Made by a program: the position numbers and the translations under genes. Under the pieces are notes generated by a model. That model made no database searches and was not told the origin of the DNA. It was given only the letters and a program-made list of their open reading frames with translations. A stretch of 64,000 bases of DNA from Bugula neritina (lineage: Eukaryota > Animalia > Bryozoa): the NCBI GenBank assembly GCA_964035545.1, contig OZ037767.1, positions 8,504,581 to 8,568,580 of the forward strand, written 5' to 3'. This document shows positions 38,844-42,300 of the stretch, in pieces. Positions within the stretch are counted from its first letter, which is position 1; each line of letters opens with the position of its first letter.

Positions 38844-39004
38844 TCAGCAATTGCATTTATTAGCAGGAGCCTGCATATCTTTAGCTGATATGATATATCC
38901 GTCATTATTGGACGATGGCCTAGGTGGTGCAACACCAGGTTTCTGTTCTGAGTCGCCATCTGCATCTGACCTCATTTGACGAGCTTGGAATCTTCGGAAA
39001 ATCT
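38844..39004 (-). CDS. RAB11: Rab11 alternative terminal exon B (EIFRRFQARQMR...ANKCNC*)
   Basis: Phase-1 acceptor (..ctttatatag|AG) compatible with the donor at 40267; open frame homologous to exon A and ending in a CXC geranylgeranylation motif. Confidence 0.75.
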
Positions 39005-39322
39005 CTATATAAAGCCATGTGATTGTAGAAAAAATAGTTGTAGTAAAAAAGGCTTGCAATTAGAAATAGTGGCCAATTAGAAAGATGGTTGATAAGAGGT
39101 GCTAAGGAAGTTGGTTTAGTAGCATGCACATGAATTTTGGAGGTCAACACAGAGGATAAGAACAAGCGAGTTAGGCAATGCCAAGGTAACCAAATTCACC
39201 ACCACCATCATATGCAGGCCATGTTATTATAACAAGTAGTTTATGAGCATCTTTTTGCTGTATCGGAACTAACGTAGTTTATGCTAGAAGTAAGGTGAGG
39301 TTTATACAGGCAGTCATGTTTG

Positions 39323-42300
39323 TTAACAGCATTTCTTGGAGCCGTGAGTTTGCTGCTCTGTTGGAGGGATGTGAATTGGCCTTACATCTCCACCTGGCTT
39401 ACTAGTATCAGCATTTTCATCACGGATTTGCCTCTGTGAAACTATCTTGTATATTTCTAAAAGTAAATAAGCAGAAGCTCCACTATTCTAAATGATTTTC
39501 AAGCTTCAAGAACGATAACCCAGCGAAAGTACTTAGCGTCATGGGACCTCAAGCCTTCAAGGGAACAAAAGGAAATGAAATAAACATTGAAAGTCAATTC
39601 AAAATGGATGGAAATGAAAAATCATACAAGTTTAGAAAATTCATCAAAATTAGGGTCAAAGTCATACATTTATAGTTTATAAGCATGTTAGTGAGACAGA
39701 TTTAGCACAATGAGGAAACCAGAACCAAGGGACATGTTTATTCCAACACAATACACCAACACCTATAAACCCTTGGAGCACATTTTACTATGTTGGGAGC
39801 TGTTAGCAGTGAACACAAGTCTTTATGGCTGAAGATAAGGACAGGAGTTACTATAAAAAAGGGGCTGGCAGCTACCCAAGGTGTGGCAGGCCATAGCAAC
39901 AAGGTAAAGGTAACCACTTCCACATTACTGCTGAACAGTGGTTACAGGATGAAAATAAGAAAATTAAAAATTCTTGAATCATGAAAACATTAAGCTGAGA
40001 GCAAAACTCCAAAGTATCGAAAATTCTTATCATTGCTGATTATTTTTTATGTGCATGAATAAACCCTACATCTGTTTAAAGTCAATATAAAACACATAAT
40101 TTCTACAGCAAATTAATCCTAATGCTGGTTGCAAGTTTAAAACAAGTTTGATTTGGATTTCAAAATGTTAATATACCAATCTGAATACTACAGTCACATC
40201 CTAAACTGCTAGCACTACAATCTGAGACGAGCAAAACAAGTGGTAGATATATGTGAATGTACCTACCAGTTAGAATGTTGTGGAAAGCTGTTTCTACATT
40301 GGTTGAATCCAAAGCTGATGTTTCTATGAAGGACAGTCCATTTCTCTCTACAACAACAGAATACTAGCTTGTAGAGATTTCTACTCAAGTGGTGAGCAGT
40401 CTAAAGGAATCACAAACATTGGGGGACTTCTACAACTCCCACCCGACTATAGCATGAACAGTGGCAAATCATTCCATTATACTGACTGTCCCAGCTATTG
40501 GACGCTGTCCCAGCTATCAAGAGCATTTTTGGATATTACTAGGATGACCTACATGAGATATAGACAAAAAGAGTTGAAGATATGTATATGCACAATAAAA
40601 GAGACTGGCTGTGGGGCTGAGGACTAGAGTGCCTAGCTGTGCTGTTGGCCCTCCGTACAAAGTCATCAAAAGTTTGGTGCTGTTTATTTCTATAAATTAG
40701 CCAAGAGGAGGACAATTATTCTGTACACCATATCAGTGTTCAAGCCTTATAACTTATATCTATCATTTTAGCTGTGAAAGGTGTGATGATTGCATCATAA
40801 TGACAGCAATATAATATGGTTATCACCTTGATGATTAGCAGTATTATTATGAGTGCATGGCTAAACAGTGCTCACAGAATACAATGCAATGAGTCAATAC
40901 CAATAAACATGACTAAATTTTATACACATCACCACGGTATGCTTTTTATTAACAATGTGCCAATGATAAGGTTATCTGAAAACCAACACAATTACCACTT
41001 TCCAACTTGGTCTTTCTGTATAAATAAGATGTACATTATATATAATTTATATGAAGCGCACCCATTGTTAACTGATTATAGAATACCAGCAACAATTTCT
41101 ACAGCATACGAAATGCTATGTGTATGTATAAATGCTGCAGAGCAATAAACTAACCAGCAAATGCTTTAGCTTCATCAGTTGGTACAGCTCTAAGGTGTCT
41201 CAAATCACTCTTATTACCAACTAGCATTATGACGATATTGTTATCTGCATGGTCTCGCAACTCCTTCAGCCATCTCTCCACATTCTCATATGTTAAGTGT
41301 TTGGCTATATCGTATACCAGTAGTGCTCCTACTGCACCGCGATAGTACCTGTTGGTAAGGTGGGGCACATGTTATAGCACAAAGTCTATCAGCTTCATTA
41401 ACCTTACATAACATATTCTGACTGGTATAAACACAATACTAAGTAAAACTGACATCTACAATAGTACTGAGAGACTAGCAGTTTAGCCTATCTTTCTTCA
41501 ACTTAAAAAGCTGCCAGTAAAAATTAGGTAATTTTTTCTGAAATGCATTACACACACAAGACGTGTAGCAAACTACTTATTAATGCAGACTTACTATAAA
41601 CTACTATAACTATAAGGTTAGTAGTGGGCTTACGCTGAAGTGATTGCTCTATATCGCTCCTGACCAGCTGTGTCCCATATTTGTGCCTTTATTGTTTTAT
41701 TGTCAACTTGTATGCTCCTATATAATGTAACACAGTGAAAATGATAGATTTTACACGTGTTGCTATTTCAACATGCAGGCTATAAAAGAGACAGAAAGTG
41801 TTTAGCCAAGAATTTGTGATACCAGAATACAGACACGTACCTTGTAGCAAACTCCACTCCAATGGTACTTTTACTTTCTAAATTAAACTCATTCCTTGTA
41901 AATCTAGATAGCAGGTTTGATTTGCCTACGCCAGAGTCACCAATTAGCACCACTGTAACCAATATACAAGACATACAGAGTAGTAATAGTATACAGTGCA
42001 TTAGCCTACAGTGTAGTAGTAATAGTATACAGTGTGTTAGCCTACAGTGTACTAGTATAGACTATAAAGTATAGTAGCATATAATGTTGTATAATGTGTA
42101 TGAGTGAAAAAAGGTTTCTATTAAAATCTCAGTGCCTGCCAAAAAGATGGCTAGTGAAGTTGTAGCATAGTGAGGAACAAGGAACAAGCCCTTCAAAAAC
42201 TATCCAATGATGAATAAGTAGCCTATCATAAAACTTTAGTGTTGAACTGAAATCTAAATATAACATTTTGTAATTTTAAATGTTTGTAAAAAGCTTAAGA

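What the first reader, a model, noticed from the sequence alone, without database searches (positions are those of the whole stretch)
38844..39456. Rab11 carries two alternative terminal exons encoding different hypervariable tails and prenylation motifs (CC vs CXC)
Seen: after the donor at 40267 (..NILT G|gtaggt) there are two phase-1-compatible acceptors. Exon A (39456-39323) gives [44 protein letters not shown]. Exon B (39004-38844) gives EIFRRFQARQMRSDADGDSEQKPGVAPPRPSSNNDGYIISAKDMQAPANKCNC*. The two align (EI.....RQ.R....D...KPG), both are stop-free and both end in a valid Rab di-cysteine motif. Known: the Rab hypervariable tail contributes to membrane targeting; CXC but not CC tails are carboxyl-methylated by ICMT; KRAS4A/4B and CDC42 switch tails by alternative last exons. 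Inference: an old tandem exon duplication lets one Rab11 gene make two differently targeted or modified GTPases, a splicing-based alternative to Rab11a/b/Rab25 paralogy. I do not know this arrangement for Rab11.
Basis: partly seen in the sequence, partly recalled or inferred. Interest (0 to 1): 0.85.

Follow-up and report, generated by a model that had tools for sequence, protein, structure and literature searches.

The report
Rab11 gene with two alternative tails
The single Rab11 trafficking gene of a moss animal (Bugula) carries a second, conserved tail-coding exon with a different lipid-anchor signal. Twin tail exons also occur in a sea squirt, an acorn worm and other animals, but the second bryozoan form was not seen spliced in the RNA I could check.

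Summary
Both exons are real. This is the single Rab11 of a Bugula neritina-group bryozoan.

Exon A (CC end) is the main last exon; its junction appears in three RNA runs. The junction to exon B (CXC end) was not seen. B lies unspliced in A's 3' UTR, so the B form is at most minor in those samples (the contigs drop rare forms).

B is nevertheless a conserved coding exon. Against a sister haplotype with about 10% intron divergence, its four changes are all synonymous. In a distant relative with unalignable introns it keeps acceptor, phase, frame and CXC (72% amino-acid identity, synonymous sites saturated).

Twin last exons also occur in Rab11 of a hemichordate (two RefSeq isoforms), a tunicate and three unidentified animals, but not in Mytilus. 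A weak tree favours repeated duplications.

Likely mechanism: choice between a proximal and a distal 3' splice site with a shared 3' end. B's homology to A is weak, and the KPG match is coincidental. Methylation and targeting differences are predictions. My searches found no paper and no earlier scan note on this for Rab11. It works like KRAS4A/4B and CDC42.

The parts
44318..44354 (-). Rab11 coding exon 1 (ATG to phase-1 donor)
   Evidence: RNA loose ends at 41962 carry these letters
41841..41952 (-). Rab11 exon 2 (P-loop, switch I)
   Evidence: junction to exon 3 in RNA contigs
41634..41717 (-). Rab11 exon 3 (switch II)
   Evidence: junctions in RNA contigs
41155..41348 (-). Rab11 exon 4
   Evidence: 62 of 64 residues identical to RAB11A chains, E 1.9e-37; junctions in RNA contigs
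40267..40347 (-). Rab11 exon 5, the last common exon; phase-1 donor GTAGGT
   Evidence: same donor in L019
39457..39480 (-). 24-nt intron element at the exon A acceptor, conserved between two distant species; candidate splicing-control element
   Evidence: 23 of 24 identical window vs L019; 24/28 positions upstream of A against 8, 10 and 3 of 28 for the other acceptors
39323..39456 (-). Last exon A (proximal acceptor): canonical Rab11 tail, CC end, major form
   Evidence: junction 40267>39456 in runs X1, X3, X4; 81% aa identity in L019
39005..39322 (-). Spacer: 3' UTR of form A, intron of form B; no AATAAA or ATTAAA
   Evidence: about 1% divergence vs about 10% in introns; covered by RNA contigs
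38844..39004 (-). Last exon B (distal acceptor): divergent tail 9 aa longer, proline-rich insert, CXC end; splicing to it inferred, not observed
   Evidence: 4 of 4 changes synonymous vs L013-L017; 72% aa, pN 0.14 vs pS 0.87 vs L019; junction not seen
38480..38843 (-). Shared 3' UTR; probable poly(A) signal at 38512 (end inferred); overlaps the 3' UTR of a convergent L14-family gene

Best explanation
One Rab11 gene encodes two proteins with the same GTPase core and different C-terminal tails. Shown: exon 5 is spliced to the proximal acceptor (A) in bulk samples, giving a canonical tail ending in CC, with exon B carried silently in the 3' UTR. Shown: exon B is under purifying selection as protein in this frame, with its acceptor kept in phase. 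Inferred: in some cell type or stage the spliceosome skips acceptor A and uses acceptor B 452 nt further on, probably through a factor binding the conserved 24-nt element at acceptor A; the poly(A) site is shared. Inferred from known enzymology: both forms are doubly geranylgeranylated by GGTase II, and only the CXC form can be carboxyl-methylated by ICMT. B also changes the end of the last helix and lengthens the membrane tether by 9 residues, so its membrane, GDI or TRAPPII behaviour probably differs. The shorter 3' UTR of form B would also change mRNA control.
For: Single-copy Rab11. The A junction is in 3 runs. B vs sister haplotype: 4 of 4 changes synonymous (P about 0.01), no indels, introns about 10% diverged. 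B vs distant species: acceptor, phase, stop and CXC kept, 72% aa identity, pN 0.14 vs pS 0.87, first 11 residues identical with 5 synonymous codon differences; introns and UTR unalignable. One more synonymous-only site within that species. Conserved element at acceptor A only. Same layout in Glandiceps, where RefSeq lists both tails as isoforms X1 and X2, in Styela and in L022, L023, L027-L029. An ICMT-family gene is present in the genome. CXC but not CC Rabs are ICMT substrates, and Rab11 normally is not (PMC5716267). Tail length and sequence matter for TRAPPII activation in yeast (PMC10152722).
Against: No exon5>B junction in the contigs of X1, X3 or X4, and contigs run unbroken across the B acceptor. 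No full-length protein with a B tail was among the 120 hits listed; that search did not list the A form either, so it is uninformative. Acceptor B has a weak pyrimidine tract, and its upstream sequence is not conserved. Localisation and methylation were not tested.
Confidence: 0.72

Rival explanations
1. Form B is made but does the same job as form A. Selection keeps a workable tail and prenylation motif, and the point of the switch is the different 3' UTR (mRNA stability or localisation).
For: The switch removes 452 nt including a spacer that is strongly conserved between haplotypes. In other lineages both tails are canonical and end in CC plus a few residues.
Against: B has diverged beyond recognition by a Rab11-tail profile, yet it is nearly as conserved between the two bryozoan-like species as A (72% vs 81%). 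That is the pattern of a new, constrained sequence.
Confidence: 0.15
2. B is coding but is reached another way: translated as a 43-aa downstream ORF from its internal ATG, or joined from a donor other than exon 5.
For: Gene callers annotate the 43-aa ORF (P0151). B is abundantly present in A's 3' UTR, and no exon5>B junction was seen.
Against: The residues upstream of that Met are fully conserved with synonymous changes. The AG sits at the same place and phase in both species. No other joint into B is listed.
Confidence: 0.08
3. B is a vestigial or chance reading frame inside a conserved 3' UTR.
For: No junction seen. The neighbouring spacer is also well conserved between haplotypes.
Against: Synonymous-only changes between haplotypes. 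Between distant species the protein is conserved while spacer and UTR align no better than shuffles.
Confidence: 0.05

Closest known systems
KRAS4A/KRAS4B
   Same: One G domain with two alternative 3' coding exons, each carrying a full membrane-targeting tail; one form dominates; kept over long times (PMC9882654).
   Different: Ras family with CaaX farnesylation; exon 4A came from NRAS and is a cassette upstream of 4B. Here it is a Rab with di-cysteine motifs and two acceptors that share one 3' end.
CDC42 prenyl and palmitoyl forms
   Same: Alternative last exons give different lipid-modification motifs and different 3' UTRs (10.1101/366369 abstract).
   Different: Rho family, CaaX vs CCaX. 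Both forms are proven there; here form B is unproven at RNA level.
RAB28 (also RAB8A, RAB15, RAB35) C-terminal splice forms
   Same: Rabs with alternatively spliced C-termini (PMC7326575; PMC9882654).
   Different: PMC9882654 finds that among 167 human RAS-superfamily genes only KRAS and CDC42 yield two distinct membrane-targeting tails; Rab11 is not listed.
Vertebrate RAB11A, RAB11B and RAB25 paralogs
   Same: Near-identical cores with different tails.
   Different: Separate genes rather than splice forms. Their tails end in CC plus a few residues, and Rab11 is not an ICMT substrate (PMC5716267).
Tandem duplicated 3' exon substitutions
   Same: C-terminal swaps are the most enriched class in human genes and arise independently in some families, for example tropomyosin (PMC9741552).
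   Different: The text search of that paper found no Rab gene named. Homology of bryozoan B to A is too weak to prove.

Membership tests
Rab11 subfamily | G-domain sequence of the Rab11 type | tested here: met
   Exon 4 has 62 of 64 residues identical to RAB11A/B chains, E 2e-37, against E 4e-25 for Rab25; Pfam Ras; single copy
Rab11 subfamily | Canonical Rab11 tail with di-cysteine end | tested here: met
   Met for exon A (profile E 5e-21). Exon B has a CXC end but is not recognised by the tail profile.
KRAS/CDC42-type tail switch | One GTPase core with two alternative 3' coding exons, each ending in a lipidation motif | tested here: met
   conserved in L018-L020
KRAS/CDC42-type tail switch | Both forms exist as spliced mRNA | tested here: inconclusive
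   A seen in 3 runs; B not seen, but contigs drop minor branches. RefSeq lists both forms for Glandiceps; its read support was not checked.
KRAS/CDC42-type tail switch | Both exons under protein-level purifying selection | tested here: met
KRAS/CDC42-type tail switch | Forms differ in lipid modification, localisation or tissue | not testable with these tools
   Predicted from CXC vs CC (PMC5716267); an ICMT-family gene is present
Tandem duplicated exon substitution | The two exons are detectably homologous | tested here: inconclusive
   Bryozoan A vs B: no BLASTP hit, local P 0.06, global P 0.002, no profile hit. Clearly met in Glandiceps, Styela, L022, L023 and L027 (about 39-57% identity).
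Alternative last exons with separate poly(A) sites | The proximal exon has its own poly(A) site upstream of the distal exon | tested here: not met
   No AATAAA or ATTAAA between A stop and B acceptor in the window, L027 or Glandiceps (single hexamers in L019, L022, L023). RNA contigs run from A through B.
Docking-site/selector RNA pairing (Dscam type) | Conserved long-range base pairing around the alternative exons | tested here: not met
   Best duplexes of the A-acceptor element (-20.6 and -25.8 kcal/mol) lie near the null of -22 +/- 3; no conserved inverted repeat

The most novel reading that the evidence does not exclude
Switching the Rab11 tail by twin last exons is a recurrent (or ancient and often lost) design across invertebrate phyla, seen here in bryozoans, a hemichordate, a tunicate and at least one more lineage. 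It would be the splicing counterpart of vertebrate Rab11a/b paralogy. In bryozoans the distal exon has become a cell-type-specific Rab11 with a longer tether and a CXC end, i.e. a methylatable Rab11 with its own membrane target.
Probability: 0.45. Interest if true: 0.75.

Novelty: new variant of a known kind. Interest (0 to 1): 0.62.

Why it matters
How much the hypervariable tail and its lipid chemistry decide where a Rab works is a long-standing question, usually studied with artificial chimeras. Natural pairs with one GTPase core and two tails, found in several phyla, are ready-made tests. Only KRAS and CDC42 are reported to do this among human small GTPases (PMC9882654). Invertebrate Rab11 is usually treated as one gene making one protein, so knockdown, tagging and rescue work may miss a second form hidden in the 3' UTR. 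The bryozoan B form would be a Rab11 open to ICMT methylation, which Rab11 is otherwise reported to lack.

Tried and rejected
It showed A but not B. X21 looked like DNA.
Exons were searched one by one by reference, or aligned to a database Rab11 (A5), so an exact look-up of either full-length form was left out.
- Exon A alone found no candidates. The profile search listed no bryozoan protein of either form, so it says nothing about B. Alignments A2-A4 misplaced exon B and were not used.
- The KPG motif was rejected as evidence of homology.
- Long-range RNA pairing around the acceptors was not supported.
- My recollection that SH3BP5 reads the Rab11 tail was not supported by the passages read (PMC6138693) and was dropped.
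- I first read the RNA contig reaching 37896 as the Rab11 3' end. It is merged with a convergent gene.
- Tail trees have about 45 columns and do not settle one origin versus several. Bryozoan B, Daphnia and P0227 were left out of the second tree as long branches.
- The taxa of L018-L020, L022, L023, L025 and L027-L030 could not be identified.

Full report
**Observation.** The gene lies on the minus strand, with coding exons at 44354-44318, 41952-41841, 41717-41634, 41348-41155 and 40347-40267, all with GT-AG boundaries. After the phase-1 donor at 40267 there are two TAG acceptors in the right phase. Exon A (39456-39323) gives a 44-residue tail ending in CC. Exon B (39004-38844) gives a 53-residue tail ending in CNC. 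By exon arithmetic the proteins would have 213 and 222 residues. In the whole window only one other reading frame meets the same loose criteria. Exon 4 has 62 of 64 residues identical to RAB11A. The genome (216 Mb) has no second intact animal Rab11 and no other copy of either tail.

**Organism.** Contigs with an identical exon-B peptide come from JGI records labelled AY690838. That accession occurs in the Bugula neritina mitochondrial genome paper and other bryozoan papers (PMC2678162; matched by accession search, not read). The window is therefore taken to be B. neritina or a sibling species. Earlier scan notes say the same.

**RNA.** In three RNA-like runs from three studies (RNA is the tool's guess, but the contigs are spliced), all upstream junctions and exon5>A are present. 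Exon5>B is not. Contigs run from A through the spacer and across the B acceptor without a break, so B is normally part of A's 3' UTR. These are assembled contigs, which drop minor branches. The result makes B minor in these samples but does not exclude it. The contig that continues to 37896 is merged with a convergent plus-strand gene of the ribosomal L14 family. That gene has a GT-AG intron at 37331-37893, a last coding exon from 37894 and a poly(A) hexamer at 38725. B lies beyond that gene's likely end, and contigs over B are much deeper than those over the L14 exon in X1 and X3, so coverage of B comes from Rab11.

**Selection.** Five contigs of a sister haplotype (L013-L017; possibly one source, so counted once) differ from the window by 9-12% plus indels in introns. 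Exon B has exactly four substitutions, all synonymous, and no indel. The chance of four synonymous transitions is about 0.01. All 13 substitutions in the coding exons covered are synonymous. A far more distant species (L018-L020, probably another bryozoan; not identified) has exons 3-5 identical in protein, with synonymous sites saturated and introns, spacer and UTR unalignable. It keeps exon A (81% identity) and exon B (72%). B has the same AG, phase and stop and ends in CSC; pN is 0.14 against pS 0.87. The first eleven residues of B, including those upstream of its internal Met, are identical despite five synonymous codon differences. This ties the frame to the acceptor and not to the ATG. 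B is therefore a conserved coding exon, and exon 5 is the obvious donor. The KPG match between A and B is absent in that species.

**Other animals.** Two loci fetched only because their exon 4 matched (L022, L023) also have two tandem last exons. RNA contigs of a third, related species (L027-L029) are spliced to the first tail and carry an intact second acceptor and tail in the 3' UTR, as in Bugula. In the hemichordate Glandiceps talaboti, RefSeq isoforms XP_077993686.1 and XP_077993687.1 differ in the tail and map to two exons 538 nt apart. The tunicate Styela clava has two such exons 2.4 kb apart, and the annotated gene range ends at the second. Mytilus and L025 show one tail exon within 10 kb. 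In all these other lineages both tails are clearly homologous and end in CC plus a few residues. A profile of 31 other Rab11 tails does not recognise bryozoan B, so duplication is inferred for B from position, phase and precedent. In tail trees, first exons group with first and second with second within the L022/L023/L027 lineage, and the two Styela exons group together. One clade of all second exons is only marginally rejected (p-AU 0.037 on 45 columns). Repeated independent duplication is favoured; one old duplication with homogenisation and losses is not excluded.

**Mechanism.** There is no poly(A) hexamer between A's stop and B's acceptor in the window, and RNA runs through it. The choice is therefore between a proximal and a distal 3' splice site with a shared 3' end (inferred). 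The 24 nt before acceptor A are 23/24 identical between the two distant species, whereas the acceptors of exons 4, 5 and B are not conserved. I infer a protein-bound control element there. No conserved RNA pairing was found. From known enzymology, CC and CXC ends are both doubly geranylgeranylated, only CXC ends are methylated by ICMT, and Rab11 is normally not a substrate (PMC5716267). The genome has an ICMT-family gene. Tail length and sequence contribute to TRAPPII recognition in yeast (PMC10152722). B is nine residues longer, with a proline-rich insert, and keeps a hydrophobic patch (YII) at about the distance from the cysteines where A has IHI. These effects are predictions; none was tested.

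**Comparison.** It works like KRAS4A/4B and CDC42, the only two human small GTPases reported to have alternative membrane-targeting tails (PMC9882654). RAB28 has alternative C-termini (PMC7326575). C-terminal duplicated-exon swaps are a known, enriched class (PMC9741552). Four literature searches found no description for Rab11. The library lacks most subscription papers, and the isoforms are already present, without comment, in RefSeq for Glandiceps. No earlier scan finding covers this.

**Limits.** Splicing to B in bryozoans remains unobserved.

**Verdict.** A real, conserved second tail exon and a new variant of a known kind, made more interesting by its recurrence across phyla. Interest 0.62.

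Noticed in passing
window:37331-38750 (+ strand): Convergent gene of the ribosomal L14 family (probably mitochondrial L14): intron 37331-37893, last coding exon from 37894, poly(A) hexamer at 38725. Its 3' UTR overlaps the Rab11 3' UTR.
   Followed up: partly
window:39457-39480 (- strand): 24-nt intron element at the exon A acceptor, almost invariant between two species whose introns are otherwise unalignable.
   Followed up: partly
window:39005-39322 (- strand): The A-B spacer differs by only about 1% between haplotypes whose introns differ by about 10%, yet is unalignable in the distant species; lineage-specific 3' UTR constraint is possible.
   Followed up: partly
G000 small contigs C66, C199, C307, C46, C101, C87 and others (L002, L003, L005, L007-L010): Many Rab-like genes with in-frame TAA/TAG but no TGA, which suggests ciliate-type genetic code and contaminant or epibiont contigs in the assembly.
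   Followed up: no
window vs L013-L017 and runs X1, X3, X4: The public Bugula samples differ from the assembly by about 10% in introns, with fixed differences; probably a different cryptic species of the B. neritina complex.
   Followed up: partly
L022:14570-15900: A divergent tandem Rab11-like paralog (67% identity in exon 4) lies directly downstream of the twin-tail Rab11 in an unidentified animal.
   Followed up: no
L031:22540-23218; L033:12955-15516; L022:11396-12146; L023:1394-1989; L027:759-1289: Twin Rab11 last exons in Glandiceps, Styela and three unidentified animals. Exon spacing is 391-611 nt in all but Styela (2415 nt).
   Followed up: yes
P0175, P0176, P0180: Aphid-group Rab11 proteins are all annotated as isoform X2; whether X1 differs in the tail was not checked.
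   Followed up: no
window:25908-32700 (- strand): Exons of a downstream gene with an SH2 domain and coiled-coil-like exons; a Fer/Fes-type kinase by appearance.
   Followed up: no
window:41979-42050: A 36-nt tandem duplication just upstream of the exon 2 acceptor; other samples carry a shorter form.
   Followed up: no
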